The notes: generated from the sequence alone by a model not told the origin. 64,000 bases of DNA from Octopus sinensis (GCF_006345805.1 NC_043000.1:159278001-159342000); one strand, 5' to 3'. Counted from the first letter of the stretch, positions 10,147-59,683 are shown. A program made the numbers and translations.

Positions 10147-11802
10147 CAACTTTCTGCACATTTCCATCTACCAAATTCTGTTCACAAGCTACTGTTTGAC
10201 TTGAGACTGTGATAAAACAGTATTACGTTATGGTATCCACCTAGTTAGGAAGTTAAATTTTTTTGCCACGCAAATATTCAATCGACTGAGAATTAATTCC
10301 ATTGAAAATGAGAGGCAAAATGGGTATTTTATCAGAGTCTCAAGTCGAACAATAACTTGTGAACAGAATTTGGTAGATGGAAATGTGCAGAAAGTTGTAT
10401 AAATACCGACAAGGAAACCTAAAACAATTTGTCTTACAATGGGACCCTTTAGGATATTTGTTCTGCGCTGAATTACAACAATACTTTTGTCACTCGGTCA
10501 GTCATAAATGCAGTGAACCAATTATTGGGCAACCAGATGCCTGCAGTATTAAAAAAAAGGGTCCACATCTCTTGCTTCGTTAATATTCTTGAGAAAGTAT
10601 AGTCCTCACAACTTCTCAAAGCATCCCTTTCCGTAAAATACAGAACTGTTCTGCTCAAAATGATCTATTCATTTGTTAGCAGGAATAGGAAAGTAGCAGA
10701 TTAAACAAATGCCATGTGTTGTTTTGCTTCGTCCTTTTATGTTCAAGACCTACCTATATCACATTGCCTATCATCTCGCTGAAGTAGCTCGAATACTTTA
10801 TCAATAATTGGTTTCTCTCTCTCTCTTTTCTTTCTTTTCTGTGTTACTCCTTTGTTCCAGGCGTCCATGTTTTAGCTAAAGACGTAAGCGAAGTGAAATG
10901 GCTTCAGCAGAAATTGAAATTGACGCAGTTACAATGTGTTGAGGGCTGATCACATAGACTATGGGTATGAGATCAATTGTCTGTAATATTCCTTTCGTTT
11001 ATTCTCATTGTCATCATCGTCACTAGTTTGCATAAGTTTTTCCATATTAGAATGGAGTAGAAAGCATTTTAGTGTTTCCTTGTTGCTTGCTGAATTTACT
11101 TCTTCACTCATTCATTCATTTTGATATTGACTTGAAGGTACCTTGTCATCAAATGCTCAGCAATTATAAACTCATATTTGATTCTAAGAAATTTAGAAAA
11201 TGGAAAGGTGTAACTTTTACTGTTTGTCCAATGATAATTTACAAGTAAATCAAACGATTCTCTATTAATTATGACTCAAAAAGTGTCAGAGTTTTGATTT
11301 ACCATAAATTTCATTCTTGTTCTAAGGCGTCCGTTCTTTACTGAGTAAGTATAGCAAACTGTCCCCCACTTCTTTAAATATTGGTCCGGTATCTCGCTAA
11401 GAAGAAATATTTATCTTATACAGAGCAATGGAGATGGTTTATATATTAGACTATCGGATTAGATTGCTTTACAGAACCTTCTATGTTGATTTATTGAGAC
11501 CTAAGTTCAAACGCTGCTGTCAAATTTGACTTTACTGTCAACCTTCTGGGTGTGGTGTGAATAATGGTTGGTTAAATTGCTGTAGATCTTCCAATGCGAA
11601 AATTATATAAGTGAAGCATTAGTAACAGAAATATAATATATAACACGTGCGTAAGTGCTGCGAAGAATCGGATAACCTCTCGTTAAGTAAATACCGTGCT
11701 ACGATTTCAATTTCTGAATAAAGAAATTATTCAGTTTTGATTACTATTACTCTTGTTTACGTCACAATATTCGAGCGCCTTCTCCCTCTAAAATAAAGAA
11801 TC

Positions 11803-12021
11803 TATTTCTTTACTACCCACAAGGGGCTAAACACAGAGGGGACAAACGGATTAAGTCGATTATATCGACCCCAGTGCGTAACTTGTACTTAATTTATCGA
11901 CCCCGAAAGGATGAAAGGCAAAGTCGACCTCGGCGGAATTTGAACTCAGAACGTAACGACAGACGAAATACGGCTACGCATTTCGCCCGGTGTGCTAACG
12001 TTTCTGCCAGCTCACCGCCTT
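11803..12021 (-). mobile_element. SINE family B (young) with 16-bp TSD
   Basis: TSD TCTAAAATAAAGAATC at 11787-11802 and 12022-12037; head GGCGGTGAGCTGGCAGAA...GAGTTCAAATTCC. Confidence 0.9.
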
Positions 12022-12601
12022 TCTAAAATAAAGAATCAACTTGCATCATGACAACTGTAATAACTGGAGACAACTGCCTTCGATGTTTTCTAATCAGATG
12101 CATCTATCGGTATAATCGCTATTGACTTTTCAGGAGTAATGATTCAGCTAATATTTATAGGAGTATGTAACTAAGAACCGCAGATCAGCGAAACATTTGC
12201 AGTGATAAGATGCACTTATTTATGTATCTGCTAACAGCGAACCAACAATTGAGAACGATGTGACTTTTTCAACACGCAAGGGAAGTCATCAGAAAACAAT
12301 AAACGCAATAAACGATGACAGCCCGAAAATCTATAGAGCTCATTAAAACATGTTTACCAAAACATACAAATTCTAAAAAAGAACAGTATTTCACAAGCAA
12401 GACAAAAATACGCGATTTTAAGGAAACAATAGCTACAACAACAACAAACCCCTAAAATATTCCATCTCCCAAACTCACAGCTCTGCACAAAAATGCTTTT
12501 AACAATTACCAGCGTTTTATACACAAAAATGTCTTCAAAAACATGAACAATAACAGCCAGAAAAATAACTTTATGAAACGAAAATTGTATAACCACACAT
12601 A

Positions 12602-14845: not shown

Positions 14846-15270
14846 AGGTGTAGTTGTGGCTGTGTGGTAAGTAACTTGCTTATAAACCACATGGTTCCGT
14901 GTTCAGTCCCACTGCATGGCATCTTCGGCAAGTGTCTTCTGCTATAGCCTTGTGACCAAAGCCTTGTGAGTGGATTTGGTAGACGGAAACTGAAAGAAGC
15001 CCGTCGTATATATGTATATATATATATATGTGTGTGTGTATGAGTGTGTGTGTATATATGTTTGTGTGTCTGTGTTTGTCCCACCAACATTGCTTGACAA
15101 CTGATGCTGGTGTGTTTACGTCCCTGTAATTTAGTGGTTCAGCAAAAGAGACTGATAGAATACGTACTAGGCTTCCAAAGAATAAGTCCTGGGGTTGGTT
15201 TGCTCGACTAAAGGCAGTGCTCCAGCATGGCCACAGTCAAATGACTGAAACACGTAGAAGAGTAAAGAGT
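14846..15270 (+). mobile_element. SINE family A (CpG-decayed)
   Basis: Full-length match with many CG>TG/CA changes. Confidence 0.88.
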
Positions 15271-15332
15271 ATACCACAAGAGGATTCTATTAGAGTTGAT
15301 ATGAAATTAGACAAGAGCAACCTGTTGCAAAG

Positions 15333-15630
15333 TCATGGACAATGAAAATTATATACAATTGCCTGTAACATAATGTCATTGAGAAAAAAATGAATTGTTT
15401 GGATTTGATCGATAATCTTGTGCATATCAAAAATAAATAAATGCAATTCACAAAGTAGAAGATTGGAATCTGCACCAAGGAGGCTGGCAAAATGTTCAAC
15501 GTTAACATAGTTGTTTTCCTCTTCTTGAGAGTTATATAACCACTCTTCTCCAGCCATCCTTGTTTGAATCATTAGGTCAATGCTAATAATTGGTTTTCCA
15601 TAGAATAAGGCAGATGTAATAAGAAAAAGT
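15333..15630 (-). CDS. Candidate further terminal exon or small ORF (uncertain)
   Basis: Strong acceptor ttttttttttaattacattttcag at 15631, then 99 open codons in the same phase as the SDR last intron; no recognisable homology. Confidence 0.2.
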
Positions 15631-16334
15631 CTGAAAATGTAATTAAAAAAAAAAGGTAAATTTTTTAATTTCAAGGAGAAATAAATTGATGTTAAATGAA
15701 GAACAAACACAAATTTACTTTCAAAGTATTTAATTATCATCATATATAAGTATATAGCAACTGAATTTAATTTTACAACAATTAGAGCAAGAATTAAAAA
15801 GAAAATTGAAAAAAAAAATACAAAAGATCAAACCAAATAACGAATGCAGAAATGAATCATTGTACTTTGTTGTGTTTAATTACATCTTTTTTTTTTAGTT
15901 TTTAATGCCAATGTGGCAACACAAATTACCTTAAAAAGTTTTCCTGAGGTATTACTTTCATAAAATTTTTTAAGTGATCTCTCTTACAGATACAAGCCCC
16001 AAAATTCATAGGAAAATGGTTTAGTCATTTGAATCAAACCAGGCTTTGATTGGTAACACAAATAATTGACTCTCCAGAGGGGTGAAAAATATGGAAACAG
16101 TTTGGATGGAATTAAATATTGACAAACATTTTTAGCTGGAGAACTTGAAAGATTTGGCCATTATGTTGAGTCCCTACATGATGGATTTTGGGAATGGTAA
16201 TGTAGTAGTAAATAGTGTTGGTTAACAGTCTAGAGTGTGATATTTCAGAAAGATGAGGAGACAGAGCAGAGACAGGAGAATAGTGTCTCAATGAAACTAA
16301 ATGTCTGCTAAAACAACACAATAACAGTAATAAT

Positions 16335-17102
16335 AATACTTTCTACTATAGGCACAAGGCCTGAAATTTTGGAGGAAGGGTTAGTCAGTTACATCAACCC
16401 CAGTGCTCAACTAGTACTTATTTTATCAACCCTTAATTGGAAAAATGTCAACCCTGGTGGCATAATTATAATAATCCTTTCTACTGTAGACACAAGGCCT
16501 GAGACTTGGGAGAGGAGACTAGATAATTACATTGACCCCAGTACTCAATTGGTACATTTTATTGACCCTGAAAAAAATTAAAGGCAAAGTCAACCTCAAC
16601 AGAATCCGAACATAAAGATGGACAAAATGACACTAAGCCTTTTGTCTGGCATGCTAATAATTCTGCTAACTTGCCATTGTAATCATAACAAATAATAATA
16701 ATGGTTTCTCATATCTGCACAAGACCACAAATTTAGTGGGAGAGGAATAGCTGACTTTGCTGTACCTTGTATTTGACTGGTACCTTATTTGATATAGGCT
16801 GGGGGGGGAGTGAAAAACAGTGTTGACCCTGGTGGGATATGAAGTCAGAATGCAAAAACCAAGAACAAATACTGTAATGCATTTATTCCAACACTCTGCT
16901 GATTCTGCCGACGTGTCACCTTCAGCTGTTTCTGGTATAGGTAGAACGCCAGCTATTTTGAGGAGAGAGGATTCGTTGATTACATCAAAACCCAGTACTT
17001 CAATGACACTTATTTTATTGACTCCGAAAAAGATGAAAGATGAAGTTGACCTTTGTTAAATTTAAATCCTGAATGTAAACAATTCTGCCAACTTGCCTTA
17101 AC

Positions 17103-17145
<43 letters not shown>

Positions 17146-18435
17146 GTTTCAAATTTTGGCACAAGGCCAACATTTTTGGGCGAGGGGCCAGTTTGATTAC
17201 ATCAACCCCAGTGCTCAACTGGTACTTATTTTATCGACCCTGAAAAGATGAAAGGCAAAGTCGACCTCAGCAGAATTTGAACTCAGAATGTGAAGACAGA
17301 TGAAATTCTGTTAAGCACTTTGCCTGGCATGCTAATGGTTCTACCGGCTCACTGCCTTTAACATAATAGTAATAATGATCCTTTCTACTACAGGCACAAG
17401 GCCGGAAATTTTGTGCGACGGGGAATAGTTGATTATATTGACCCCAGTGTTCATTGAACCTGAAAGGATGAAAGGCAAAGTTGACCTTGACAGAATCTGA
17501 ATACAAAATATAAAGGACAGGTGAAATGCCATTAAGCATTTTGTCCACTGTGCTAATGATTCTGCCAGCTCACTGCATTAATAAGAACAACAATAATAAT
17601 AATAATGATGAAAAGAAGAAGAATATCTAATGTAGATGCAAAACCATACATTTAAACTCAAAGTGTTGAAAGATAATAAAAAAACTGAAAAGTATTTAAC
17701 ACACCCACCAGCTAATTCTGCCCATCACCACCAAAATAAGTTTACAATAAGACAAGTTTACATAATATAACAACAATAATAATATCTTAGACAGGCACAA
17801 AATACGGGGAAGGTTTATAATTGATTGAATTGATACCAATACTTGGTTGGTAATATCTGTTCTCAATGGCAGAAGGATGAAAAGCAAAGTTGATAAACAA
17901 ATATCTGAACTTGAAAAAAAAAAAACTCGCCAGTTGACAGAACTTTAATTTAGACCTGTTCCTCAAACTTTTCTTTCTGCTTCTAAGCCATTATGTCAAT
18001 AAATCCTTTCTACTAAAGGCACAAGGCCTGAAATTTGTGCGGAGGAGACTAGGCAATTACATCAATACCAGTGTTTCACTGGTACTTAATTTATCGGCCC
18101 TGAAAGAATGAAAGGCAAAGTCGACCTTGGTGGAATTTGAACTCAGAACATAAAGGCAGATGAAATGGCGCTAAGCACTTTGCCAAGTGTGCTAACAGTT
18201 CTGTCAACTCACCACCTTAATGGTAGTAATAATGGTTTCAAATTTTGTCACAAGGCCAGCAATTTTGGGGGTAGGGAACAAGTTGATTATATTGACTCCC
18301 AGTGCTTTTATTTTATTGACCCTGGAAGGATGAAAGGCAAAGTCAACCTGGGCAGAATTTGAACTCAGAACGTAAAGATGGATGAAATACCACTAAGCAT
18401 ATTGCCAAGTGTGCTATTGATTCTGCCAGCTGACT
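16335..18435 (-). mobile_element. Cluster of about 8-9 old family-B-related SINEs, mostly head-to-tail and separated by (AAT)n
   Basis: Repeated GGCACAAGGCC...GAAAGGCAAAGT.GACCT...GAATTTGAACTCAGAA blocks. Confidence 0.8.
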
Positions 18436-20428
18436 GCTTTGATGAGGATGATAATAATAATAATGTTAATATCAAAAACTCAAATATTCTTATTCCATCT
18501 TCATACTTTAATTCCATTGTAATTTCAGAGGTATATATTTTTTACTTCATTTTGCGTATTTTTTCCCAATTTTTTTTTTAGCTTTTTAAAAAATTTTTTC
18601 CATATTTAAAAAATATTTTAAACATATTTATTAATATATAATTTAATTTAGAAATTAATTTATTTATGTATGCATATTTTCAGCTGACTTTTAGTGAAGC
18701 TTGTTCTTGTTCACTCACCAATGTTTATATCAATGATGTGCAAGGCTGTGTGTGTATATGTATCATTTATATGTGTATGTGTGAATCATTTATTATCAAT
18801 ATAGTCTCATTGAAAAGTCTGAATACATTGACAAAAAAAAGTTTTAAAATGTAATTGATGATGTAAATAAAAAAAGAAGAAAAATAAGGAATGCATTTAG
18901 TAATATAATCAGATAACATAATGACTAACAAAAGAGAGATTTCTGAAGTTGGACAGGTGGTCTATCTTTCTCTACCCTAGGCGTTTTTCCTACTTCCCTG
19001 TATGCTTACAAAAGGAAATATCAATGTTATACAACTAAATATTTGGTATTATAATCACCTAACCTCTAATACAGCAGTGACATGGTTAGACATGCTTTTA
19101 ACCAAATTTTTTTATAGTAATCTCTAGTTATTTTCCCATGCAGTATCTTTTAAATTGGAAAATTATTAAACATTTTCTGTTTCAAATTTTGTTCTCAATA
19201 TAATCCTGCAGATTTTCTTTAGGGTTCAGACCAAAAGATTATGCCGGTCATTTACCCAATACAGTAATCTCATTAGCTAGCACTAAGCTATTCTTTGGAT
19301 ATATGTAGAAAATCCATGTTGGAATATATTGCAATTAAGGATGCTTATATGAATAAGGAACAGCTTCAGTGGAACATCTAGGTAAGTTTCAGAATTAATA
19401 TTGTGGGATATTATCCAAATACCAGTGCTGCCCTTTGAAGAAATAACCCTCCCACCACCACCACCCATATCATAATGGATGGCCATTGCTTGACTCATAC
19501 GAGAATATATACATAAGATTGTACTTTGAGTTTGATGGATGACAAACAAAAGGAGTTTTAGATGTAAATCTTTAATGGCTGTTTTGTCATAAACATTACA
19601 TTTAACCAGCCCACATTAGTCCAGTTTTTATTATCACTGCAGAAGCACAGATAATCCTAGATGTCTTCTGTGAAAGCCTTATTTATTTTGCTGTACTTAA
19701 AGCAATTATTTAAGTCTTCCAGCAATCAACAACTTATAGTCTTAACATAGAATTCTTCCCTGTAAATGGCGATGCAACACAAAGACAATCAATCACACAT
19801 TTGGTTTGAAGATTTTGGTACAAGGTTTACCTGACATTCCATGTCATTTGTGCACATCTATCAAATGAAAATGACAATAAGCTTTCTGGACATCGTCAAC
19901 TGATACTTTTAGCTGTGCTGATATCTTCCTGTATGGGAGTCCATTGCTAGGCAAAGGAAGAATCTAAGCCCTTATTTCAAATGATAGCTCCTTATTTTAA
20001 TAAAACACTGACATCTACTATGATAGCTTAAATCTCAAATAAACAAGAAATTATGAAGTAATATTTTATCATTCATATACAATAATACATAATATAAGTT
20101 TTCTTACTTGCGCAAGTAGCTAGTAGATAACTGATTTCTATACTTAATAAAAAAAAATTGAGAAAAAATCTTAAATTTCGTTTTTGTATTCAGACTTTAG
20201 TCCAAGATGACATTTCATTTGATAATGTATGTATGTATGTTTGAATATATATGTGTGAGTGTGTGTATTCCTGTGCACTGTGCGTTTATACATTTTTATC
20301 AGAGCAAGTGTCTGCCTCTGAATTAATTAATAAGCCTATAGATACTTATTTGTGTGCATGTATATATTTGTATATGTGTTTCTCTGTGTATGCATGTAAA
20401 TGTGGTAGTGTGAGTGTATGGAGAAGAT

Positions 20429-20522
20429 TCATTCTTGTTTTTGTCGGCCAATAAATGTCTCCATACTTTGAGTGGTAGCAAAGAAGTTACAAACCACTGA
20501 CATACATCTCACCGGCAAGTAC
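20429..20522 (-). CDS. SDR16C5-like: SDR alternative terminal exon B (YLPVRCMSVVCNFFATTQSMETFIGRQKQE*)
   Basis: Acceptor ttttatttttgtcttttag|G, phase 2; TGA at 20431-20429; aligns with exon A and with the family-type M.TF.GR C-terminal motif. Confidence 0.85.
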
Positions 20523-20770
20523 CTAAAAGACAAAAATAAAAGAAACAAGAGTTACATTTTTGTTACAATAGCTCATCATATAAAACATTACATAACTTTA
20601 TTATGGTAACTTATAGAAACTATTAGTGATATCATGCAGTTAACTTATAAAATGATAATTTATTAATGACATTTAAAATTTATATATAGTTTATAATAGT
20701 AATTTATTAATAATTAATAATTCAAAAATTAAATATAACTTAATTGAAGAATAAAATTCACCAGAAAATA

Positions 20771-21714
20771 TTAGGTCATCCCATAAGTTCTGTCCAAATT
20801 TTGAATAAAGAAAATAAGTGATCAAATGTTATATTTAATTGAAATTAATAATCAATGTACTTTCCCTGATTATCTATGACTTCCATCCATCTATTTACAA
20901 GCTTTTAAATCCTATCAATGTAAAAACTCTTCTGGTTTCAAAGCAAAGAACTGCTAGTCTGAAGGAGAACCTTTTTTTCCATGAAGTTCCCTTCTCGGTT
21001 GTGGCTGAGCTTTTCCCCTTTTACCAAGCCACTGTTTACAATGTTTAACATTTCATTAGAAGATCTATTTTTCATTACCAGTCACAAGTCTAACCAAAAA
21101 GGGTCAAATGAGTTTGCAAGAATGGAGAGAAGAGCAGATGTCAACTTGGGATTTGCGGTTGCTTTCGGACAATTCATGAGGCACCCATTTTCCAAGTTTA
21201 GGAACCTTTCCAAGTTGTTGAAGATGATGATGAACAGTTGTAACGACTTGAATTAAGCTTTATTGCCAATTCTTCAACTGATAATGCAGGATTTTCTTCA
21301 AGTAATGCCTCAAGGAGCTTATCATCAAGCTCAACTGGACGTCTTGTTCAATCTTCATCTTCAAGGCTGAAATCACTACTTTTGAATTTTGCAAACCATC
21401 TTCTGTAATTTTTCTCATTCAAGCATTCTTTCCCATAAACTGAGTGTATGTTTTGAGTCGCTTCAGCTGCAGAATTTCTCTTTTTGTACTCATAAAGCAT
21501 TATGTGCCTTAAATGCTCTTTGGATACTTCCATATTAGAAAGGGTTTTAATCAAAGAAATTTTAATTCTATTATTCTGTAAAATAATATTTAGTTTAAAT
21601 GTACACAAATGCATAAAAATAATCTTTAATTCCATTAGATATTCTAAACTACTATTAAATTTCATTCATTTTTGAAAAAGGTAAAATCAGACAGAACTTA
21701 TGGGATGACCCTGA
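20771..21714 (-). mobile_element. Mariner transposon, internally deleted and decayed
   Basis: TIRs GGTCATCCCATAAGTTCTGTC with TA flanks; transposase remnants MEVSKEHLRHIMLYEY..., RRWFAKF, KWVPHEL, LVTGNEK and C-terminal KVIDNQGKYID; most of the catalytic domain is absent; stops and frameshift present. Confidence 0.9.
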
Positions 21715-22039
21715 TATCTTTTTAGTCTTTGTGTATAAGGACTTTTGGCAAGTGGAAAATAAATTATGCAATACATGAGAATTATGTAATATATATATAT
21801 TGATAGTACATAGATAAGTTTTTGAGTTCATATGCAATAAGCAAGGAGTCTGACATCTCATCAGAAAGACAGAAAAATGTTTTTAGAACATCATGAAATT
21901 AAGTGTAAAATTTTTGACAAGCAATACCACCTATATCTATCCATATATATCTATCTACCTACCTATATCTATCTACCTACCTACATCTATCTATATCTAT
22001 CTATCTACACCATACAACATTACACATCACATCATACAT

Positions 22040-22360
22040 ACATACATACATACATACACTCTCTCATACACACACGCACCCTTATGTTGGGGCGAAGTCA
22101 TTTGACCCTGTTATCTCTATTTTCGCTCTTGCATCTCACGTTTGATCTCTGACTTCTGGCCAGAATCGCCATGTTGAATTGCTAGCTTCTGCACGCATTT
22201 TTTTCTCTCCTTGTTTCTTTTCTGTGTATCTTTCTGTTGAAGAGCGTAGGCTCGAAACGTAAAAGACTTGTTTTATTTATATTCCTGAGCGCCATACTAA
22301 TACAATTGTTTGTTTGTACTCTACCTGCCTTCATCTTTTGTTTATTTTCATAAAGCTTCC
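22040..22360 (+). mobile_element. Penelope-like terminal fragment with hammerhead-like motif, embedded in (CTAT/CTAC)n
   Basis: Homologous to 13690-14000 and 5200-5350; motif TCTTTCTGTTGAAGAGCGTAGGCTCGAAACGTAAAAGA. Confidence 0.6.
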
Positions 22361-23002
22361 CGTTATCTATCTATCTATCTACCTACCTACCTATCTATCT
22401 ATACCTATCTACCTACCTACCTATCTATCTATATATACCTACCTACCTACCTATCTATCTATTTATCTATCTATCTATACCTACCAACCTACCTGCCTGC
22501 CTGCCTAGCTAGCTAGCTATGATTTTTATCTTTTTATACTATATATCTCTCTGTATCATGCTAGTATTATCAATAAGCTTTTGTTTTTAATTTAAGCTAC
22601 CATTTTTACAGCTGGAAACTCATTCTTCAGTTATACTCAATTACAAATGATGAGAATATTAGCAGTGAATCAAACTGAAGCATGTACAGTTGTGTCTAAT
22701 ATAGATCACTAAGGTCACCACACACACCTTTTCAAAACAGACCAATGAATTTAAACTTGACCATATGACTACACAGTGAAGATTAGACATAAGAATGGCC
22801 ATCTAAAAGAGCCAAGCACATCATGCTCTGCCACTTGGGGCATCATAAATACAGCAAAACCTCACATCATAGGGTCTAAATTAGATCCCTCTAAATCACA
22901 GCAATGCTTTTCAACAAATAAAAGTTCTTAACCCTTTTCCTTTCCGTCCTTTGTTTTTACTTTGTTTGCTTCTTTTTTTATTTAAAAAAATTTTTTTTTA
23001 TT

Positions 23003-23412
23003 TCTCTTTTACTTGTTTCAGTCATTTGACTGCGGCCATGCTGGAGCACCGCCTTTAGTCGAGCAAATCAACCCCAGGACTTATTCTTTGTAAGCCCAAT
23101 ACTTATTCTATCGGCCTCTTTTTGCCGAACTGCTAAGTGATGGGGGACATAAACACACCAGCATCAGTTGTCAAGCAATGCTAGGGGGACAAACACAGAC
23201 ACACACACATACATATACATATATATATATATATATATATACATATATACGACAGGCTTCTTTCAGTTTCCGTCTACCAAATCCACTCACAAGACTTTGG
23301 TCGGCCTGAGGCTATAGCAGAAGACACTTGCCCAAGGTCCCACGCAGTGAGACTGAACCTGGAACCATGTGGTTGGTAAGCAAGCTACTTACCACACAGC
23401 CACTCCTGCGCC
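23003..23412 (-). mobile_element. SINE family A
   Basis: Full-length match to the other copies. Confidence 0.9.
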
Positions 23413-24162
23413 TATTTATTTATTTATTTATTTTTTTACACATGTATAACAAATGTGTGGGAGGGATTTGTTTTGAAATACATTTAAAATATTCAGTATC
23501 AGATAAATATACTTGATAAAACAATGTAGAGTAACCAAAATTGTATACTTATGATTATAAAAATACATATGTAGTCATTTCCCCCAGAGTAAACACATGT
23601 CAGTAATGGAAAAGGTTAATCTGGAGACAGATCTGATATTGTTTTGCAGATGCAAAACCTATCTGAAGACATCTTAAAATCACATAGATAATGCCAACCA
23701 AATTCAATCTCTAACTCAATATCCTACAATAACTATACTATTACTATGACATTCACAGCTGAACCAACACAATATTCAAATGTCTTATGCATTTGTGGAT
23801 GCATGTGTATGTATAAAATAATAGAGAATATAAAAACAGTCAGAGCAGTAAATAATTTTCCATTTTTTATATTTATTTATACAGAGATATGAAATGTCTG
23901 GATCTTCCTAAGGAAACAGCAGACCACTGCTTATTTTGTATTTAATGGGGTTTTTTTTTGTGCCTATGTAGATGTCTACACAAAAAAAAACAAAAAACAA
24001 AGATATAAAAAAAACACAAGTAGAGGTCTGCTGTTTCCTTACCAAAATCCAAACATTCTATATGTGCATATAAATGAAAAGAAAAGAAAGGAAAGAAAAA
24101 TGCCCATTGTCTAACTTTCTCTATCAAATCGTTATTAATATATTTTGCTGCAGACATCCAAG

Positions 24163-24180
24163 AACGTGTGTGTATGTGTG

Positions 24181-24235
<55 letters not shown>

Positions 24236-24274
24236 GTATGTATGTATGTGTGTGTGTGTATATATATATATGTA

Positions 24275-24319
<45 letters not shown>

Positions 24320-24350
24320 GTGTGTATATATATATATATATATGTATGTA

Positions 24351-24397
<47 letters not shown>

Positions 24398-24485
24398 ATA
24401 TATATATATACATGTATGTATGTGTGTATATATATATATATGTATGTATGTGTGTATATATTATATATGTATGTATGTATGTGTG

Positions 24486-24545
<60 letters not shown>

Positions 24546-24660
24546 ATATATATATATGTATGTGTGTGTATATATATATATACATGTATGTATGTGTGTA
24601 TATATATATATATGTATGTATGTGTGTATATATATATATATGTATGTATGTGTGTGTGTG

Positions 24661-24702
<42 letters not shown>

Positions 24703-24714
24703 TATATGTATGTA

Positions 24715-24767
<53 letters not shown>

Positions 24768-24782
24768 GTATATATATATGTA

Positions 24783-24822
<40 letters not shown>

Positions 24823-24835
24823 CACACATACACAC
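24163..24835. repeat. Compound (TA)n(TG)n micro/minisatellite, about 670 bp
   Basis: Repeating TATATATATGTATGTATGTGTGTG-type units; source of several spurious ORFs. Confidence 0.95.
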
Positions 24836-24986
24836 ACTGCTTTGCACCTGTATGCTAGTATATAAACATGGACATTTCTGCATGACTACATATTCATATC
24901 TTTGTTCTTCATATATTAGGTTACTTACCTGTCTTTATAACTACACATTCTGGATGAATACTTGAACACACACACATATATGTATG

Positions 24987-25054
<68 letters not shown>

Positions 25055-25409
25055 GCGTGTGTGTAGTTCTATGCACATGTATATCTACTTTATAGTACAC
25101 TGACACCAAGTAAAACTCATACACACACTGACAGATGCATCAGGACTACCTTTGCACACACATCTATATAGATAAATTAATTTATGTCTGATTTATTACA
25201 CTTGTATAAACACAGTTTTTTTCTTACCTAGTTAAGTATGGTTGTGTTTGTATGAATGCAACTGGTTCAATATATTTGTGCATATGTGTGTGTATTCATA
25301 GGTTTGAGTTTTTGTACATTAAAATTGTTCTATTATATTTGCCTGATATATATATTATATATATCAGATTATATGTATAAGCTTATTTAAAACTTTTTTA
25401 TGCCTGTAG

Positions 25410-25790
25410 ATTCTTCTATTCTTTTACTTGTTTAAGTCATTAGACTACAGCCACACTAGAGCACCGCTTTGAGTAATTTTAGCCAAATGAATCAACCACA
25501 TTACTCATTTTTTTAGGCCTGGTAATTATTGTATTGATCGCTTTTGCTAAATCACTAAGTTACAGGGCTGTAAACACAGTAATACTGGTTGTTATTCTGT
25601 GGTACAATACACACACACACACAATGAGTTTCTTTCATTTTTCTGTCTACAAAATCTACTCACAAGACTTCGATCAGACTGAGGATATAGTAAAAGGCAC
25701 TTGCTCAAAGTGTCACACAGATGTATTGAACCTTAAATAATGTATCAGGGAAGCAAACTTCTTACCTTACAATCACACCTGTGCCTATGA
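25410..25790 (-). mobile_element. Old diverged family-A-like SINE
   Basis: Recognisable but degenerate match; similar degenerate pieces near 30940-31070, 37150-37275 and 41490-41870. Confidence 0.6.
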
Positions 25791-26588
25791 CTGCAATGTA
25801 CATCAGCATGTAGAAATACACACACTAACAACCAAATACATCAAGGAGCCTATCATGACGAATCCATTCTCCTAAACACATGTTCAAATCTCCACACTCA
25901 ACCAAAATTCCTGCTGTTTTTTTTTTATCATGTTCTGTATCTCTCCTATTTCCTTTTCCATCCACTGTATATTACGCCAGCACTGAGATATGAACTACTC
26001 TTTTTGATGCTTCACAATTTAATTTCATTTATCTCCTAAACTGTTATTTCAGAATAACCAACCTTAACATCTATGAAGTGCATGCATACATATGCATTTG
26101 CACACACATCTTCCCCCCATTAGCTTTTGTTAATTGTACATGCCATATGAACTTTGATATGTGAACTCATGTGCCATCACTACCAAAAGTAAATATATTT
26201 CAACCTTAGTTTCTCTCATCTAGATTTCATTCCCAAATTAGCAATTTCAATATAAAACCAAAACTTAAAAATAAACATCTTAGTTACAATTATGCTTAGA
26301 GGTGACTCTTTAACATAAACCAATGAATCTGACTTGTGCTCCTATGCAAATCTAACCTCTCATATCTGTATTTACAAACATGCTTGAATGAACTCAAATA
26401 ATAAGTAAAATTAATTTACCTACACTAAATATAATAAATCTAGATAACTAGATTCAACAAGGCTTTCAAAACAAACCACTAATGTAACCAATTTTATGAC
26501 ATGTATCACATGTGTTCCTATATAAATCTAACAGTACCTGAACACTGAATGCTCCCCAAAAATAACATTTAAATAATCAATCATCTTT

Positions 26589-26815
26589 GTGGTTTAGTGG
26601 TTAGGATGTCAGCACCATGATCGTAAGATTGGGGTTTTGATTCCTGGACCGGGCGACGCGTTTTGTTCTTGAGCAAAACACTTCATTTCGCGTTGCTCCA
26701 GTCCACTCAGCTGACAAAAATGAGTAATGCTGTGATGGACTGGCGTCCCGTCCAGCTGGGGAACACATATGCCATAGAAACCGGGCCCATGAGCCTGGCT
26801 AGGCTTTAAAAGGGT
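26589..26815 (+). mobile_element. tRNA-derived SINE (family C core, different tail)
   Basis: A-box GTGGTTTAGTGG, B-box-like GTTTTGATTCC; tail shared with the element at 62270. Confidence 0.8.
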
Positions 26816-27889
26816 GTATTTATTTTTATTTAAAACCAAGATAAGAGAAGCAACCTAATTAGATTCAACAAATCATCAACTGTCAAAACCAGAAAATGGC
26901 TTTACTCTTCATTACTTGTTTATTTTATTTACATATTCTTCCTCTTACTTAAATTCTTTATTTCTTCCAGTTAAACTCTCCATAAAGATATTTCTATATA
27001 TACAACAAAAATTGACATCAAAATACATATATAAACATAAGGCCTAACAAAGCAATGTACTTTACAGTCTCATTAGGCTGAAGTTTTGAAATAACTGACA
27101 ACCATTTCTTGTAAAAAGTATGCACACACACACACAAAACACAATACACATTTATTTTCTAGTGAATTATAATTAAATGCCAATTTGTCTTTTGTTTTTA
27201 CTTTCCATATAAAGATACAATTACTATTGCAGCATCAACAATTATATAAAAATTCCTTTACACAAAAACTTTCACATAAAAATGTAATATGCTTTTTATT
27301 ATCAAGAATAAATCAAGCAAAAAAATAAACAATATGAAAATAGAAAACTCAAAATGAAACCAAATTCTTTGCATTTAATTGAAGTGGCATTAAATTTAGT
27401 TAATTTTCCAGTTGTAGAATTAAGTAGAACAAGCAAGATATATACATATATATATGTAAATACATACATTACATACATATACACACACATATACATACAT
27501 TATGTACATATTGTATATATACACACATACATGTGCATACATGATAAATATATGTGTGTATGTATGTATGTATGTATACAATTGCATATATAAACAAAGA
27601 AATCAAGAAAAGAATATAACATAAAAACAACAGGAATAAATAGTTTAAGAAATCACTAGAATTGTTAAAGACAATAAAATATAAAAATAACAGAAAACAA
27701 TGGAAATATGACAGAAACTAAATAATAAGATAATGCAAATAAAGTTTTCCAAAAGAAGAAGAAAATAGAAATAAGAAAAGAAGGAGGAAAAGTAAATACG
27801 ATGAATGAGAACAAAGTAAGCTAGAGAAAAGAAATTGGAAAAGGTTTATAAATATATATATATATATTTTGAAGAAGGTAATGAGAGAG

Positions 27890-28075
27890 AAAATAGAAAG
27901 CTTCTGACAATGTGGAGAGTTTAATAAAACCTTTATATTTCGGGCACAAAGGCCCATCTTCAGAAGAAAAGAACAGTTTGAGAAATGTCCAGTTATGAAG
28001 GTTCCGTTAGCCCATTAAAATTTAACTATAAAGGTTTTTTTAAAACTTTCTTCATTGTCAGAAGTTTTCTATTTT
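27890..28075. repeat. Imperfect inverted repeat (about 48-bp arms) enclosing a hammerhead-like motif
   Basis: 27890-27937 vs 28027-28075. Confidence 0.75.
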
Positions 28076-28131
28076 CACCTTTTATATCTTTTTCAATGCT
28101 ACAAGCGACAATACTCTTGTATATATTTATA

Positions 28132-28562
28132 CAGGTCGTCATCGACTTATGACCTATCAGACTTATGACTGATCGACTTTATAACTGGCGTGCCAGCTCC
28201 CAGCAGTAATAATAAATCGTCCAGTTGAAATCTAATGGGATTATGGATGATGTCAGCAAACAAACACTTCCCCTAGACTTGGTTATTGATCACCACTGTG
28301 TTGGATGACTATTCTGTCACAGAGACATTGAGATAACCTCAAATTTGTTTATAAGATGACTGCTTGAGACTCTGAGATTTTTAACTAACACCAGTATAAT
28401 AGTATAATACAGAATGCTGTGTGTGACTTTTACCTGAGAATGTACCTTAAGAATGTAAAAATATAAAACAAAGCTATGTAGGCCTATAGGCTGACTTACA
28501 ACCTAATTGACTTAAGACTAGTCAGTCACAACCTGCTGTGGTCATAAGTCGATCACAACCTG
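28132..28562. mobile_element. Tigger/pogo-like MITE
   Basis: 23-bp TIRs CAGGTCGTCATCGACTTATGACC / GGTCATAAGTCGATCACAACCTG (21/23 match); TA on the left flank only. Confidence 0.75.
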
Positions 28563-29164
28563 AGTATGTATGTATATATGTGTGTAAAAAGGATTACAAT
28601 TCAAGCTGTGTCCTCATGAAATACTTCTGCTAATTCTAGCTATCAGTTGTTTGGATGTAAATGTTTAATCTTTAAGGAGACAATTAAACATACCAATTGA
28701 AATTTATGGTCAAGTGTATGAGCTGCAGAGTGTGTCTATATCAAAACAAAGACTGGAATTTATGATATTGTTTCATCATCATTTAATATCTATTTTCCAT
28801 GCTGGCATGGGTCGCAAGGCTTGACAGAAGCTGGCAAGCCAGAGGTCTGTACCAAGCTTAAATGTCAGCTTTGGTATGGTTTCTATGGCTAGATGCCCTT
28901 CCTAATAATATACATATATATGTATACATACATTACCATTTAATACCAATGTGCAATTCCATTAACACCTATGTGCAACAAATTGTATAAAGGGTATTAA
29001 AGGCTAATGAATGTACATATATTATTATATCATGAATTCATTATATGCATACTATTGTTGTTACTGTTAATATCTATGCTTACAAAATATATTTCACATA
29101 TTTTAATGAAACAAGTGTAAGTACAGAATTAGAAATAATACCATATATTTCAGTCTTTGACAAA

Positions 29165-29206
<42 letters not shown>

Positions 29207-29306
29207 ATTAGAAAATTATATTTTGTGAAATTTGATTTAGTATTTCTAAATTGAACTTTTCCCTGTAAGTTTGGAATGATATTCCCTCATATTATTATTA
29301 TTAATA

Positions 29307-29312
29307 TTTATT
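29307..29312 (-). terminator. Candidate AATAAA poly(A) signal for isoform A
   Basis: First AATAAA I found downstream of the exon A stop (about 510 nt); weak evidence in AT-rich DNA. Confidence 0.3.
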
Positions 29313-29821
29313 ATCATCATCATCATCATCGTTTAACATCTGATGATGATGATGATGATATATATATATATATATATGTGTGTGAACATGCACAGAGATA
29401 AGATACAAGATTCAAAAAGATATTAGCAATTGAAAAGAAATGAAAACATTACTGAAACAATGGTGAGAAATAATATCAGATCTATAATCTGGTGTGATCC
29501 AGAAAAAAGAAGCAGTGACCTTCGTTTCTGTCTTCTTTCATGCATTAGTGCTGCTTCTGACTAGATATGAAAGCAGGAATATGAGGTGCAAAGCGGAGAA
29601 GCCAGAACGGTAAACAAAAATATTAAACAAAAGCAGTAAGAGTGAGTGATAAAGAAATACTGACAAAGTCGGATAATAGATGAGGGAGTATGTTGTGGTC
29701 AAGTGGATGACCAGTACAGAAAATAAAGGTGCAACATAAAGGTAAGACACAAAGGCAGCAATAGATTTAAAGAAGAATTATTCTCAGAAAATGTAGAGAC
29801 CTGTGAATAAACTCAGAAAGA

Positions 29822-29921
29822 TCATTCTTTCTTTTGTCCCAGTTTACCCTTGAATTTTTCCATGTCTGTAGATACTCCAAAGAAACGAGCAAGCAGGGAT
29901 ATGCATTTGTGTGGCAATATT
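29822..29921 (-). CDS. SDR16C5-like: SDR terminal exon A (ILPHKCISLLARFFGVSTDMEKFKGKLGQKKE*)
   Basis: Acceptor ttcttcttcag|A completes the GGA codon (phase 2); TGA at 29824-29822; SDR16C-like C-terminus. Too short to appear in the ORF track. Confidence 0.88.
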
Positions 29922-35657: not shown

Positions 35658-35783
35658 CCTTTTAGTCCAAGTGTGTAATAGAGCAACCGTGGGATGTATA
35701 AAATATGAGTGTTACAACGTACAGCCTCAACAATTTTATCTGATACATATCCTGGTTCCAATATAGGCATCAGGTAAGGAAAT
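35658..35783 (-). CDS. SDR16C5-like: SDR penultimate exon (FPYLMPILEPGYVSDKIVEAV...LGLKG)
   Basis: Acceptor tttctttag|A, donor GG|gtgagt; 126 nt, phase 2 to 2; sequence resembles the SDR16C P.L.P.YV...IV.A segment. Confidence 0.93.
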
Positions 35784-41123: not shown

Positions 41124-41368
41124 CGAACTTTGACACCATTGAACATGCCTGTGTTTATATAGAAAGGGCAGACCACTGTTGTGTGAACACCATCTTTGCC
41201 TAATACTTCAAGTTCGAATCGAAGACTCTCTTCAAATCCTACCACTGCAAACTTGCTGGCACAATAATCAGTAAGGCTATTGACACCAAGGAGACCCGCT
41301 GCACTCGCTACAGTTACAACATGTCCATGGTTTTCTTTGATCATGGCTGGTAGAAATGCTTTCACAGT
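41124..41368 (-). CDS. SDR16C5-like: SDR catalytic exon (TVKAFLPAM...DYCASKF...GVKVR)
   Basis: Acceptor tttcag|ACT, donor CG|gtaagt; 245 nt, phase 0 to 2; YxxxK and catalytic Ser. Confidence 0.97.
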
Positions 41369-44673: not shown

Positions 44674-44805
44674 CCAGAAGTGTGCCATTGTATTGACATC
44701 AATAGTCTTTTCTATCAATTCATCAGGACACTCCAAAAATTTTCGACCAGTCACAATGCCAGCATTGTTTATTAGTATATGAACCATTCCAATATCTTCG
44801 TTCAC
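44674..44805 (-). CDS. SDR16C5-like: SDR coding exon ([20 protein letters not shown]...AHFW)
   Basis: Acceptor ttttgtcag|GTG, donor TGG|gtaggt; 132 nt, phase 0 to 0; NNAG motif. Confidence 0.96.
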
Positions 44806-45281
44806 CTGACAAAATAATGAAGAAAAGAATTAATCTTCAGCATGTCAAAGCCTTATCCATAAGTCACATAAATAACAATCTGGAAATTGATTCTAGAGAT
44901 TTGCCCTTCATCTCAGAAAAGATAAGAAAGTGATAGACATAGGTTCGTAGCTTATTATATGAAGCAATCTAGAATCCAAGGGATCTTGTCTTTGTCACCA
45001 GCAATATGCTTAAAAGAGAGTACATATAACCTGCAATTAACTAAATATATTTTGATATTATTAATAAGGGACACATTAAAGACAATGTACTTGGAAACAC
45101 ATTATGGTGGGCTATGGATGACGTCATCAGATGGTAAGACTTGGGTTTCTGTGCAATCTTTCTTCAGTATTTGCTGCTGGAGGAGGAGGAGGGAGAGAAA
45201 ACTCAAACCATACATCATGATCTGAATATACATTTGTTTGCTCATTTACTTTCATGACTGGCAGAAGCCTGAAACAATAAC

Positions 45282-53808: not shown

Positions 53809-53993
53809 CTTTCGAGCCGTTTCATAAATCTCGTCTTTGTTACCGAGATCCACTTTATACTGGTAACAGCTACCACCAAGTTCTTTGATGGCTTTGGCAG
53901 TTGCATCATTGCCTGGAACATTAACATCCCAGAGGACCATTCGACAGCCGAGTTTGGCAAACCGAAGGGCTAGCTCACGGCCGATTCCGCTTC
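53809..53993 (-). CDS. SDR16C5-like: SDR internal coding exon (GSGIGRELALRFAKLGCRMVLWDVN...ETARK)
   Basis: Acceptor ttttacag|GAAGC at 53993, donor AAG|gtaag at 53809; 185 nt, phase 1 to 0. Confidence 0.95.
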
Positions 53994-58993: not shown

Positions 58994-59044
<51 letters not shown>

Positions 59045-59130
59045 CATGTATATATATATTATATATATACATACAGTATATATATATTATTATATATTAT
59101 ATAATACATGTATATATATTATATATATAT

Positions 59131-59177
<47 letters not shown>

Positions 59178-59209
59178 CATGTAGATATATATATATATAT
59201 ATAATATAT

Positions 59210-59250
<41 letters not shown>

Positions 59251-59472: not shown

Positions 59473-59514
<42 letters not shown>

Positions 59515-59652: not shown

Positions 59653-59683
<31 letters not shown>

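What the first reader, a model, noticed from the sequence alone, without database searches (positions are those of the whole stretch)
20429..29921. Two duplicated, mutually exclusive terminal exons give an SDR16C enzyme interchangeable C-termini
Seen: two separate minus-strand exons 9.3 kb apart, each with a strong acceptor in exactly the phase (2) left by the donor at 35658, and each ending ...GAA TGA. A = ILPHKCISLLARFFGVSTDMEKFKGKLGQKKE*; B = YLPVRCMSVVCNFFATTQSMETFIGRQKQE*. Thirteen residues are identical (L,P,C,S,F,F,M,E,F,G,Q,K,E), and many of them use different synonymous codons (CCA/CCG, TGC/TGT, TCC/TCA, GAA/GAG, TTC/TTT, GGT/GGC, AAG/AAA). That is the signature of an old duplication with both copies under purifying selection. 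I found no duplicates of the upstream exons between or near them, so a second paralogous gene is unlikely. Established: in vertebrate SDR16C members (RDH10, HSD17B11/13) the C-terminal segment contributes to the substrate pocket/dimer and to membrane or lipid-droplet association, and vertebrates diversify this family by whole-gene paralogs. Inference: one cephalopod locus makes two retinoid/lipid dehydrogenases of different specificity or localisation by alternative last-exon/polyadenylation choice. Neither exon is in the ORF track, so annotation may miss one of them.
Basis: partly seen in the sequence, partly recalled or inferred. Interest (0 to 1): 0.85.

Follow-up and report, generated by a model that had tools for sequence, protein, structure and literature searches.

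The report
Octopus dehydrogenase gene, two swappable tails
One Octopus sinensis lipid/retinoid-type dehydrogenase gene carries two old, duplicated versions of its last coding exon and so makes two proteins that differ only in the roughly 30-residue C-terminal tail; both forms are already in RefSeq, and similar arrangements occur in cuttlefish, bivalves and a brachiopod, so this is a real but fairly ordinary case of a known splicing pattern.

Summary
Two homologous, phase-matched, stop-terminated exons (A 29921-29822, B 20522-20429, minus strand) follow the phase-2 donor at 35658 of an SDR16C-type dehydrogenase gene of Octopus sinensis. No second copy of the upstream exons exists in the window.

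Both proteins are already annotated in RefSeq: X1 has tail A and X2 has tail B. O. bimaculoides has the same pair. The same exon pair, in the same order, is present in Argonauta and in the cuttlefish Acanthosepion, and both exons are under purifying selection.

The proposed mechanism is probably wrong. In Sepia esculenta mRNA contigs the A form is exon 5 + A + B. A is therefore a 123-nt stop-containing cassette exon, and B is the constitutive last exon with a shared 3'UTR, not an alternative last exon with its own poly(A) site. Octopus has a matching weak donor (CAG|GTCTCT) 21 nt after the A stop, but no octopod transcript could be reached.

The same cassette layout is shown by mRNA in oysters. 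Multiple tail exons also occur in Mya and Lingula (three), but not in the one annelid or one hemichordate gene examined.

The swapped exon corresponds to HSD17B13's second amphipathic anchor helix plus its substrate-site plug. Verdict: real, a new member of a known kind (tandem-duplicated C-terminal exon substitution), moderate interest.

The parts
53809..53993 (-). Exon 2 of the SDR16C-type gene (…GSGIGRELALRF…ETARK; second half of the TGxxxGxG cofactor motif). Exon 1 lies outside the window.
   Evidence: 100% match to RefSeq protein P0001. Exon 1 was not found in the window.
44674..44805 (-). Exon 3 ([18 protein letters not shown]…AHFW; NNAG motif)
   Evidence: Collinear conserved block with Argonauta and Acanthosepion.
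41124..41368 (-). Exon 4 (TVKAFLP…VASAAG…YCASK…NGVKV; catalytic Ser and YxxxK)
35658..35783 (-). Exon 5 (FPYLMPILEP…LLYYTLGLK-G). Phase-2 donor AGG|GTGAGT at 35658/35657. [quoted passage not shown]
29822..29921 (-). Tail exon A, coding part including the stop (ILPHKCISLLARFFGVSTDMEKFKGKLGQKKE*). Used by RefSeq isoform X1 (311 aa).
   Evidence: Orthologues in Argonauta (L001 54221-) and Acanthosepion (L011 36428-36550). pN 0.18 against saturated pS.
29795..29821 (-). 21 nt of post-stop exon A sequence (29821-29801), followed by the putative weak 5' splice site CAG|GTCTCT (GT at 29800-29799). This would make A a 121-nt cassette exon spliced to exon B.
   Evidence: Inferred by homology. The mRNA-proven cuttlefish donor is CAG|GTGTCT, 26 nt after the stop, in a 123-nt exon. 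Argonauta has CAG|GTCTTT. A crude PWM score is low. No octopod transcript is available.
20429..20522 (-). Tail exon B, coding part including the stop (YLPVRCMSVVCNFFATTQSMETFIGRQKQE*). Used by RefSeq isoform X2 (309 aa) and by the O. vulgaris model. Probably the constitutive last exon, with the 3'UTR continuing to lower coordinates.
   Evidence: Orthologues in Argonauta (L001 57773-57865) and Acanthosepion (L011 from 42031). pN 0.09. Poly(A) signals at 20001, 19687 and 19632.

Best explanation
The window holds exons 2-5 and two tandem-duplicated versions of the last coding exon of the Octopus sinensis gene that RefSeq calls 'epidermal retinol dehydrogenase 2'. It is an SDR16C-type, HSD17B13/HSD17B11/SDR16C5-like membrane or lipid-droplet dehydrogenase. 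Exon 5 can be joined either to exon A or directly to exon B. This gives two enzymes with the same Rossmann/catalytic core and the same N-terminal anchor. They differ in the C-terminal module, which corresponds to the second amphipathic helix of the membrane-anchoring helix-turn-helix plus the terminal peptide that plugs the substrate site in HSD17B13. Most likely, as shown in cuttlefish, exon A is a short internal cassette exon with its own stop codon about 20-26 nt before a weak donor. When A is included, translation ends in A and exon B becomes 3'UTR. When A is skipped, exon B is translated. The A/B pair predates the octopod-decapodiform split. The same kind of arrangement exists in bivalves and a brachiopod. 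Shown here: the exon anatomy, homology, conservation, purifying selection, annotation of both proteins, and cassette splicing in Sepia and oysters. Inferred: cassette splicing in Octopus itself, avoidance of nonsense-mediated decay (NMD) through the short stop-to-junction distance, and any functional difference between the isoforms.
For: The window is O. sinensis. P0001 (X1, tail A) is 100% identical to the model, and P0123 (X2, tail B) is also in RefSeq. The same X1/X2 pair exists in O. bimaculoides, and O. vulgaris and Argonauta models use tail B. There are no other copies of exons 2-5 in the window. Argonauta has e5, then A, then B in the same order, and so does Acanthosepion. Between octopus and Argonauta, only e3, e4, e5, A and B are collinear conserved blocks. 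pS is saturated at 0.75-0.94, while pN is 0.18 for A and 0.09 for B, against 0.07-0.08 for e4 and e5. Sepia esculenta mRNA contig L004 reads e5 + 123-nt A + B + shared 3'UTR, while L005-L010 read e5 + B. In the Acanthosepion genome A and B are 5.5 kb apart, with donor CAG|GTGTCT. Octopus has CAG|GTCTCT 21 nt after the A stop, and Argonauta has CAG|GTCTTT. Oyster mRNA L012 carries the second tail exon in its 3'UTR, 25 nt after the first stop, and the M. gigas genome shows the introns. Structure: the closest solved proteins are HSD17B13 and HSD17B11. The tail's LP aligns with HSD17B13 L273-P274. In PMC10449848, P274-N286 is the anchor/dimer helix and N286-K300 plugs the substrate site. AlphaFold models of both isoforms (pLDDT 88.5 and 89.5) give the same helix 283-293 followed by an extended peptide.
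Against: No octopod transcript could be examined, so the 29801-to-20522 junction is not demonstrated. The octopus donor has C at +3 and scores low in a crude PWM (2.2, against 5.9 for the proven cuttlefish site and 7-11 for the gene's constitutive donors). The Argonauta candidate lies 56 nt after the stop rather than 21-26 nt, and the post-stop sequence is not conserved at the nucleotide level. An AATAAA lies 509 nt after the A stop, so an independent poly(A) site for A in Octopus is possible. In Sepia assemblies the A form appears in 1 contig against about 40 for B-type proteins, so it may be a minor form. No enzymatic or localisation data exist for either isoform.
Confidence: 0.7

Rival explanations
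1. One reading: exon A is a true alternative last exon with its own cleavage and polyadenylation site, and exon B is a second, distal last exon. The choice would be made by competition between splicing and polyadenylation.
For: The octopus candidate donor after A is weak. An AATAAA lies 509 nt downstream of the A stop and several ATTAAA lie further on. The post-stop sequence is not conserved between Octopus and Argonauta.
Against: In the nearest lineage with transcripts (Sepia), A is spliced to B and both forms share one 3'UTR. The same holds in oysters. Octopus and Argonauta both keep CAG|GTCT.T as the first CAG|GT behind the stop, resembling the proven CAG|GTGTCT. The predicted exon length of 121 nt matches the 123 nt in Sepia.
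Confidence: 0.25
2. Exon B, or exon A, is the relic last exon of a lost tandem paralogue. It is a decaying pseudo-exon that gene predictors pick up but that makes no functional protein.
For: Gastropods, chitons and Mercenaria have separate paralogous genes with different tail types. Collapse of a tandem paralogue is therefore a plausible origin of the extra exon.
Against: Both exons keep the acceptor, the phase, the open frame and the stop in three cephalopod genomes, across saturated synonymous divergence. pN is 0.09-0.36, far below pS. Both tail types are present in complete ORFs of Sepia mRNA contigs. The family-invariant tail residues P, M, F and G are kept in both.
Confidence: 0.03
3. Inclusion of exon A is mainly a regulatory 'poison exon' event that lowers output of the B-type enzyme through premature termination and NMD, rather than a way to make a second functional protein.
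For: A carries an in-frame stop upstream of an exon junction. The A form is rare among Sepia assemblies (1 contig against about 40). The Argonauta stop-to-donor distance of 56 nt is at the NMD threshold known from mammals (my knowledge of the 50-55 nt rule).
Against: The A peptide itself is conserved at the amino-acid level across coleoids and keeps the family-invariant tail residues. A pure poison exon has no need for that. The stop lies only 21-31 nt before the junction in six of seven cassette-position exons across three phyla, which is the arrangement expected to escape EJC-dependent NMD.
Confidence: 0.07
4. The arrangement is an assembly artefact: a chimera or a duplicated contig end.
For: None found. 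The Lingula assembly does show a suspicious duplication of exons 2-3, so artefacts do occur in this gene family's loci.
Against: A and B are only 38-43% identical and differ at synonymous sites. The same two exons, in the same order, are found in independent assemblies of Octopus, Argonauta and Acanthosepion, and in annotations of O. bimaculoides and O. vulgaris.
Confidence: 0.01

Closest known systems
Vertebrate SDR16C dehydrogenases: HSD17B13, HSD17B11, SDR16C5 (RDHE2)
   Same: Same fold and motifs (TGxxxGxG, NNAG, S/YxxxK), an N-terminal hydrophobic helix, and a C-terminal helix-turn-helix plus terminal peptide. These are the best sequence and structure matches (HSD17B13 E 1e-69, TM up to 0.95). 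The last-exon boundary falls at the same place: the human exon-6 donor variant isoD truncates the protein at P274, which aligns with the LP at the start of the octopus tail exons.
   Different: Vertebrates carry one tail exon per gene and diversify through whole-gene paralogues. The octopus gene carries two homologous tail exons. The substrate and localisation of the octopus enzyme are unknown, and the RefSeq name rests on homology only.
Tandem duplicated exon substitution events, C-terminal class (for example the tropomyosin 3' exons); PMC9741552, PMC8373072
   Same: Homologous tandem exons give isoforms that are identical except for a homologous region. C-terminal swaps are an enriched class (77 of 236 human events). 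Most such events are ancient. The tropomyosin 3' exon triplets appear to have arisen independently in different phyla, which mirrors the unresolved question here of one origin versus several.
   Different: This family and these taxa are not in that catalogue, which covers human genes, and I found no paper describing this case. Here the upstream copy is, where tested, a stop-containing cassette exon, so the two exons are exclusive only at the protein level.
Classical mutually exclusive exons (Dscam, insect Mhc)
   Same: Tandem homologous exons of equal phase, with one version per protein.
   Different: In Sepia and oysters the A-type mRNA contains both exons. No mechanism enforcing exclusivity at the RNA level, such as competing RNA structures or steric hindrance, is needed or seen.
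Alternative last exons with alternative polyadenylation
   Same: The outcome is the same: two alternative C-termini from one locus.
   Different: In Sepia both forms share the B exon 3'UTR. Separate poly(A) sites are not shown for Octopus.

Membership tests
SDR16C-type classical short-chain dehydrogenase (HSD17B13/HSD17B11/SDR16C5-like) | Rossmann cofactor motif TGxxxGxG and NNAG motif | tested here: met
   TGSGSGIG spans the exon 1/2 junction (P0001; exon 2 GSGIGR). INNAG is in exon 3. Pfam adh_short E 2.5e-48 over residues 43-232.
SDR16C-type classical short-chain dehydrogenase (HSD17B13/HSD17B11/SDR16C5-like) | Catalytic Asn-Ser-Tyr-Lys tetrad | tested here: met
   VASAAG…YCASK is in exon 4. 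N149, S177, Y190 and K194 are invariant in the 50-sequence alignment. The tetrad is described for SDR16C in PMC9859523.
SDR16C-type classical short-chain dehydrogenase (HSD17B13/HSD17B11/SDR16C5-like) | N-terminal hydrophobic anchor helix, C-terminal amphipathic helix-turn-helix and terminal peptide | tested here: met
   The models have helices at residues 4-29, 270-280 and 283-293, followed by an extended end. The sequence aligns with HSD17B13 through the FLPERA helix. Element roles are taken from PMC10449848. The N-terminal helix is encoded outside the window.
SDR16C-type classical short-chain dehydrogenase (HSD17B13/HSD17B11/SDR16C5-like) | Closest relatives are SDR16C members rather than other SDR families | tested here: met
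   The top PDB sequence hits are HSD17B13 (1e-69) and HSD17B11 (1.5e-66), with the next at 2e-38. Foldseek ranks 1-21 are all HSD17B13 or HSD17B11. Homologues are named SDR16C5, RDHE2 or dhs-3.
SDR16C-type classical short-chain dehydrogenase (HSD17B13/HSD17B11/SDR16C5-like) | NAD(P)-dependent retinol, steroid or lipid dehydrogenase activity | not testable with these tools
   No biochemical data. The name is by homology only.
Tandem duplicated exon substitution (homologous alternative exons) | Two adjacent exons of the same gene that are homologous to each other, with the same phase and about the same length | tested here: met
   A is 32 codons and B is 30. Both follow the phase-2 donor at 35658. 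Both hit the tail profile (E 1e-12 and 6e-14), and they are 38-43% identical.
Tandem duplicated exon substitution (homologous alternative exons) | Isoforms that are identical except for the homologous region | tested here: met
   RefSeq X1 (P0001) and X2 (P0123) have 100% identical bodies and different tails.
Strict mutually exclusive exons | Exactly one of the two exons is present in every mature mRNA | tested here: not met
   Sepia esculenta contig L004 and oyster contig L012 contain both tail exons. This was not testable for Octopus itself.
Alternative last exon with alternative polyadenylation | Each terminal exon has its own 3'UTR and poly(A) site | tested here: inconclusive
   Not met in Sepia, where about 1 kb of 3'UTR is shared at 99.6% identity. 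In Octopus only sequence signals exist: AATAAA at 29312.
Stop-containing cassette exon giving an alternative C-terminus | Internal exon with a functional acceptor and donor, an in-frame stop, and the downstream exon becoming 3'UTR | tested here: inconclusive
   Met in Sepia/Acanthosepion and in oysters. In Octopus the acceptor and the stop are present, but the donor CAG|GTCTCT at 29801/29800 is only inferred.

The most novel reading that the evidence does not exclude
The duplicated tail exon may be a single, very old (pre-mollusc-brachiopod, Cambrian or earlier) splicing switch, retained for more than 500 million years. It would swap exactly the substrate-gating C-terminal plug and second anchor helix of SDR16C dehydrogenases. 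Lophotrochozoans would then achieve by splicing what vertebrates achieve with the HSD17B11/HSD17B13/SDR16C5/SDR16C6 paralogues. The conserved 21-31 nt distance between stop and junction would be a selected device for evading nonsense-mediated decay.
Probability: 0.3. Interest if true: 0.6.

Novelty: new member of a known kind. Interest (0 to 1): 0.4.

Why it matters
HSD17B13 is a heavily pursued liver-disease drug target whose physiological substrate is still unknown. Its crystal structure suggested that the C-terminal peptide gates the substrate site and that the preceding helix anchors the enzyme to lipid droplets. The human protective variant isoD removes exactly this exon-encoded module.

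Molluscs and a brachiopod keep two or three alternative versions of precisely that module under purifying selection. This is independent evolutionary evidence that the module tunes function, whether substrate access, stability or membrane targeting. It also offers a natural pair of tail-swap isoforms to test the idea.

For genome annotation, it is a reminder that a stop-containing cassette exon can be mistaken for an alternative last exon. Beyond that, it is one more example of a well-known class of splicing event, and both proteins are already in public databases.

Tried and rejected
- **First protein search.** A search with only exon 5 plus tail A (74 aa) found nothing, because the query had too few indexed words. 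It was repeated with the 262-aa model.
- **50%-representative library.** This search returned only distant SDRs and added nothing about close relatives.
- **Exon 1.** Motif-plus-donor scanning and tblastn did not find it in the window.
- **Second paralogue.** A sensitive tblastn (word size 2, E up to 100) found no further copies of exons 2-5. The one weak hit, at 6974-6729, contains two stops.
- **Contiguous A and B in cuttlefish.** The idea that cuttlefish A and B are contiguous in the genome, which would mean alternative 3' splice sites, was tested and rejected. They are 5.5 kb apart.
- **O. bimaculoides DNA.** It could not be fetched: X2 is not indexed, and the X1 gene range of 334 kb is too long.
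- **dN/dS.** Ratios could not be computed properly because synonymous sites are saturated, so pN and pS are reported instead.
- **Tail tree.** The NJ/bootstrap tree of tail peptides is too weak to decide between one duplication and several.
- **Other searches.** NCBIfam is a prokaryote-oriented library, all its hits were below cut-off, and it was uninformative. Rfam found nothing in the window. Literature searches found no description of this exon pair.

Full report
**1. The observation**

Reading the minus strand confirms every sequence statement in the finding.
- Exon 5 ends ...CTA AAA GG|gtgagt at 35658, which is phase 2.
- Exon A starts at 29921 behind ...ttcttcttcag. It encodes (G)ILPHKCISLLARFFGVSTDMEKFKGKLGQKKE and ends with TGA at 29824-29822.
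- Exon B starts at 20522 behind ...tttttgtcttttag. It encodes (G)YLPVRCMSVVCNFFATTQSMETFIGRQKQE and ends with TGA at 20431-20429.

I mapped the rest of the gene in the window:

| Exon | Coordinates (minus strand) | Notable content |
|---|---|---|
| 2 | 53993-53809 | GSGIGR (part of TGxxxGxG) |
| 3 | 44805-44674 | NNAG |
| 4 | 41368-41124 | Ser, YxxxK |
| 5 | 35783-35658 | phase-2 donor |

Exon 1 is not in the window.

A sensitive tblastn of both isoform models against the whole window finds no second copy of exons 2-5. It finds A and B as each other's best non-self hit (E 0.014). A profile built from 111 distinct homologous tails hits only these two places above noise in the six-frame translation of the window (E 1.8e-12 and 5.6e-14).

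**2. What the locus is, and what is already known**

The window is Octopus sinensis. My A model is 100% identical to RefSeq 'epidermal retinol dehydrogenase 2 isoform X1' (XP_029635639.1 and others, 311 aa).

The same 90% cluster holds these related entries:
- O. sinensis isoform X2 (XP_036358503.1, 309 aa), which ends with exactly the exon B peptide.
- O. bimaculoides X1 (tail A with I>L) and X2 (tail B with E>D).
- O. vulgaris CAI9720612.1 and an Argonauta hians model, which both use tail B.

So one gene with two C-termini is already in public annotation. I found no paper that describes the exon pair.

**3. Conservation**

The Argonauta hians locus has exon 5, then an A-type exon (FLPAKCQSLFARFFGISSDMETFRGKMCRKTD*) about 3.5 kb downstream, then the B-type exon (YLPVRCMNVVCEFFATTQSMETFVGRTKQE*) another 3.5 kb or so further on. 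The cuttlefish Acanthosepion pharaonis has exon 5, A and B in the same order.

Between Octopus and Argonauta, the only collinear conserved blocks in 31 kb are exons 3, 4, 5, A and B. All other matches are dispersed repeats.

Synonymous sites are saturated between these taxa (pS 0.75-0.94). Non-synonymous divergence stays low:

| Exon | pN, Octopus vs Argonauta | pN vs cuttlefish |
|---|---|---|
| A | 0.18 | 0.31-0.36 |
| B | 0.09 | 0.27-0.31 |
| 4 | 0.07 | 0.11 |
| 5 | 0.08 | 0.20-0.21 |

Both tails also keep the family-invariant tail residues (P282, M299, F302, G304). Both exons are therefore functional coding sequence. The duplication predates the octopod-decapodiform split, and A is somewhat less constrained than B.

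**4. Mechanism**

Assembled RNA-seq contigs from a sepiid give direct evidence. The run SRR19578101 is Sepia esculenta larvae. All contigs carry complete, intron-less ORFs.
- Contigs L005-L010 join exon 5 (...AAAAGC) directly to exon B (GTACCTACC...).
- Contig L004 is 99.5% identical upstream and 99.6% identical over about 1 kb of downstream sequence. It carries 123 extra bases between exon 5 and exon B: exon A, its TGA, and 26 further bases.

On the Acanthosepion genome these 123 bases form an exon at L011 36428-36550, with donor CAG|GTGTCT. The exon is separated from exon B (from 42031) by a 5.5-kb intron. I had considered that A and B might be contiguous in the genome, which would mean alternative 3' splice sites. 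This result excludes that.

So in cuttlefish A is a stop-containing cassette exon and B is the constitutive last exon. The A-type mRNA contains both exons and uses the same 3'UTR. This is neither an alternative last exon with its own poly(A) site nor strict mutual exclusion.

Among the assemblies, B-type proteins are seen on about 40 contigs and the A-type on 1. This suggests, only roughly, that skipping of A is the major form.

In Octopus sinensis, the 21 bases after the A stop end in CAG, followed by GTCTCT (exon end 29801). This would give a 121-nt exon. Argonauta has CAG|GTCTTT as the first CAG|GT behind its stop, though 56 nt away. The octopus site is weak by a crude PWM: 2.2, against 5.9 for the proven cuttlefish donor and 7-11 for the gene's constitutive donors. 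An AATAAA also lies 509 nt after the A stop.

No octopod transcript was reachable with these tools. I therefore rate the cassette mechanism in Octopus as probable (about two in three), not shown.

**5. Beyond cephalopods**

Protein pairs with identical bodies and different tails also exist in Mya arenaria (X1/X2), in Lingula anatina, and in oysters.
- **Oyster.** The mRNA contig L012 ends its CDS with CLPGKC...FMDTFKGRNPN*. Twenty-five nt later its 3'UTR carries the other oyster tail exon intact (IFPVKV...SMDEFKGRAATKLD*). On the Magallana gigas genome the two exons are separated by about 2 kb. The cassette layout is therefore proven there as well.
- **Mya.** It has two tail exons 5 kb apart.
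- **Lingula.** It has three in tandem.
- **Outgroups.** The single orthologues examined in the annelid Owenia and the hemichordate Ptychodera have only one tail exon within the gene plus 10 kb downstream. Other paralogues in those species were not examined.

In six of seven upstream-position tail exons, the best donor lies 21-31 nt after the stop. From my knowledge of the mammalian 50-55 nt rule, this spacing is expected to spare a transcript from EJC-dependent NMD. Whether that rule holds in molluscs is not known.

Whether all these exon pairs descend from one duplication is unresolved.
- Tails of the same gene never cluster together in bootstrap trees: cephalopod A+B 0%, Mya 0%, Lingula 0%, oyster 12%.
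- Mya's terminal tail groups with a tail from a separate Mercenaria gene at 90%.
- Octopus B is closer to Lingula tail 1 (61%) than to its own paralogue A (38%).
- These results argue against recent lineage-specific duplication or concerted evolution.
- However, support for any cross-phylum grouping is low (18-37%). The apparent tail types also sit in the opposite order in cephalopods compared with Lingula and oysters.

The literature on tandem duplicated exon substitutions notes the same ambiguity for the tropomyosin 3' exons.

**6. What the swapped piece does**

The closest solved structures are HSD17B13 (E 1e-69; Foldseek E 1.6e-33, TM up to 0.95) and HSD17B11. The alignment places the L-P at the start of both octopus tails on L273-P274 of HSD17B13.

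According to the HSD17B13 structure paper (PMC10449848):
- P260-N286 is an amphipathic helix-turn-helix. It anchors the enzyme to the membrane or lipid droplet and contributes to the dimer.
- P274-N286 is its second helix.
- N286-K300 fills and blocks the substrate site and contacts the substrate loop.
- The human exon-6 donor variant isoD truncates the protein at P274 and destabilises it.

The human last-exon boundary and the octopus swap point therefore coincide. The swapped exon encodes exactly the second anchor helix plus the substrate-site plug.

AlphaFold models of both octopus isoforms are confident (pLDDT 88.5 and 89.5, pTM 0.88). They give the same topology: helix 270-280 from exon 5, a turn at the junction, helix 283-293, and an extended peptide from the tail exon. 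pLDDT is about 85 in the tail helix, about 76 in the extended peptide, and about 55 at the extreme end.

Across coleoids the two tail types differ consistently at a few positions:
- First residue: I/F in A, Y in B.
- Position 12: basic R/H in A, N/E in B.
- Near the invariant Gly: F-[KR]-G in A, F-[IV]-G in B.

It is a reasonable inference that the isoforms differ in substrate access, stability or membrane association. This is not tested.

**7. Classification and verdict**

The gene meets the sequence and fold criteria for an SDR16C-type dehydrogenase. Its activity is untested and its name rests on homology.

The exon pair is a tandem-duplicated, homologous C-terminal exon substitution. This is a recognised and even enriched class of alternative splicing: 77 of 236 human events are C-terminal (PMC9741552). 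It fails the strict definition of mutually exclusive exons where that could be tested. In cuttlefish it also fails the definition of alternative last exons.

The proposed mechanism and the annotation claim are not right, and the phenomenon is neither new to databases nor restricted to cephalopods.

What this analysis adds is fourfold:
- the cassette mechanism;
- the cross-phylum distribution;
- the short, conserved distance between stop and junction;
- the mapping of the swapped exon onto the HSD17B13 plug-and-helix module.

Interest is moderate (0.4). It would rise if a single ancient origin and a functional difference between the isoforms were shown.

Noticed in passing
window 55253-58088 (minus) and 58000-60400: A LINE-type retroelement lies in intron 1 of the gene. 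It has an RVT_1 ORF at 55253-57049 (E 6e-31) and an endonuclease (Exo_endo_phos_2) ORF at 57468-58088 (E 1e-12). It abuts a block of about 2.5 kb of AT/TG-rich microsatellite (GC 12%).
   Followed up: partly
window 21351-21665 (minus): A fragment of a Mos1/mariner transposase (HTH_48 domain, E 3.5e-20) lies inside the 9.3-kb intron between tail exons A and B.
   Followed up: partly
window 11700-12040; 16526-18440 (five copies); 45281-46283 (three copies); 63368-63579: A SINE-like repeat of about 220 bp has at least 10 copies on both strands (69-89% identical). Related copies are scattered through the Argonauta locus. No Rfam or tRNA-like family matched at the gathering threshold.
   Followed up: partly
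L003 (Lingula anatina) 18755-18847, 19453-19545, 20744-20836: Lingula has three tandem tail exons, not two. Whether the middle one (LLPFHLTRLICEFMGNQTFMDTFRGRAKQN*) is expressed is unknown. It has the strongest candidate donor (AAG|GTGAAG), 27 nt after its stop.
   Followed up: partly
L003 (Lingula anatina) 11067-11963 and 14911-15804: Exons 2-3 of the Lingula gene occur twice in the assembly. This explains an older 419-aa protein model (P0004) with an internal repeat. Whether it is a real tandem duplication or an assembly artefact was not resolved.
   Followed up: no
Proteins P0016 and P0022 (Mercenaria mercenaria, same chromosome): These are two separate paralogous genes with bodies 82% identical. 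One is annotated with the tail type that is the cassette exon in Mya, the other with the type that is Mya's terminal exon. This could be sub-functionalisation of the two tails after gene duplication, or each gene may still carry both exons.
   Followed up: no
Orthologous locus in O. bimaculoides (GCA_001194135.2): The annotated gene range is 334 kb, against about 48 kb in Argonauta. This implies far-upstream alternative first exons or a very long intron 1. Exon 1 of the O. sinensis gene likewise lies outside the 64-kb window.
   Followed up: no
window 24181-25050 and L001 53141-54191: Long TA/TG microsatellite arrays lie in the A-B intron of Octopus and immediately upstream of exon A in Argonauta. 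These are low-complexity matches, not evidence of conserved regulatory sequence.
   Followed up: partly
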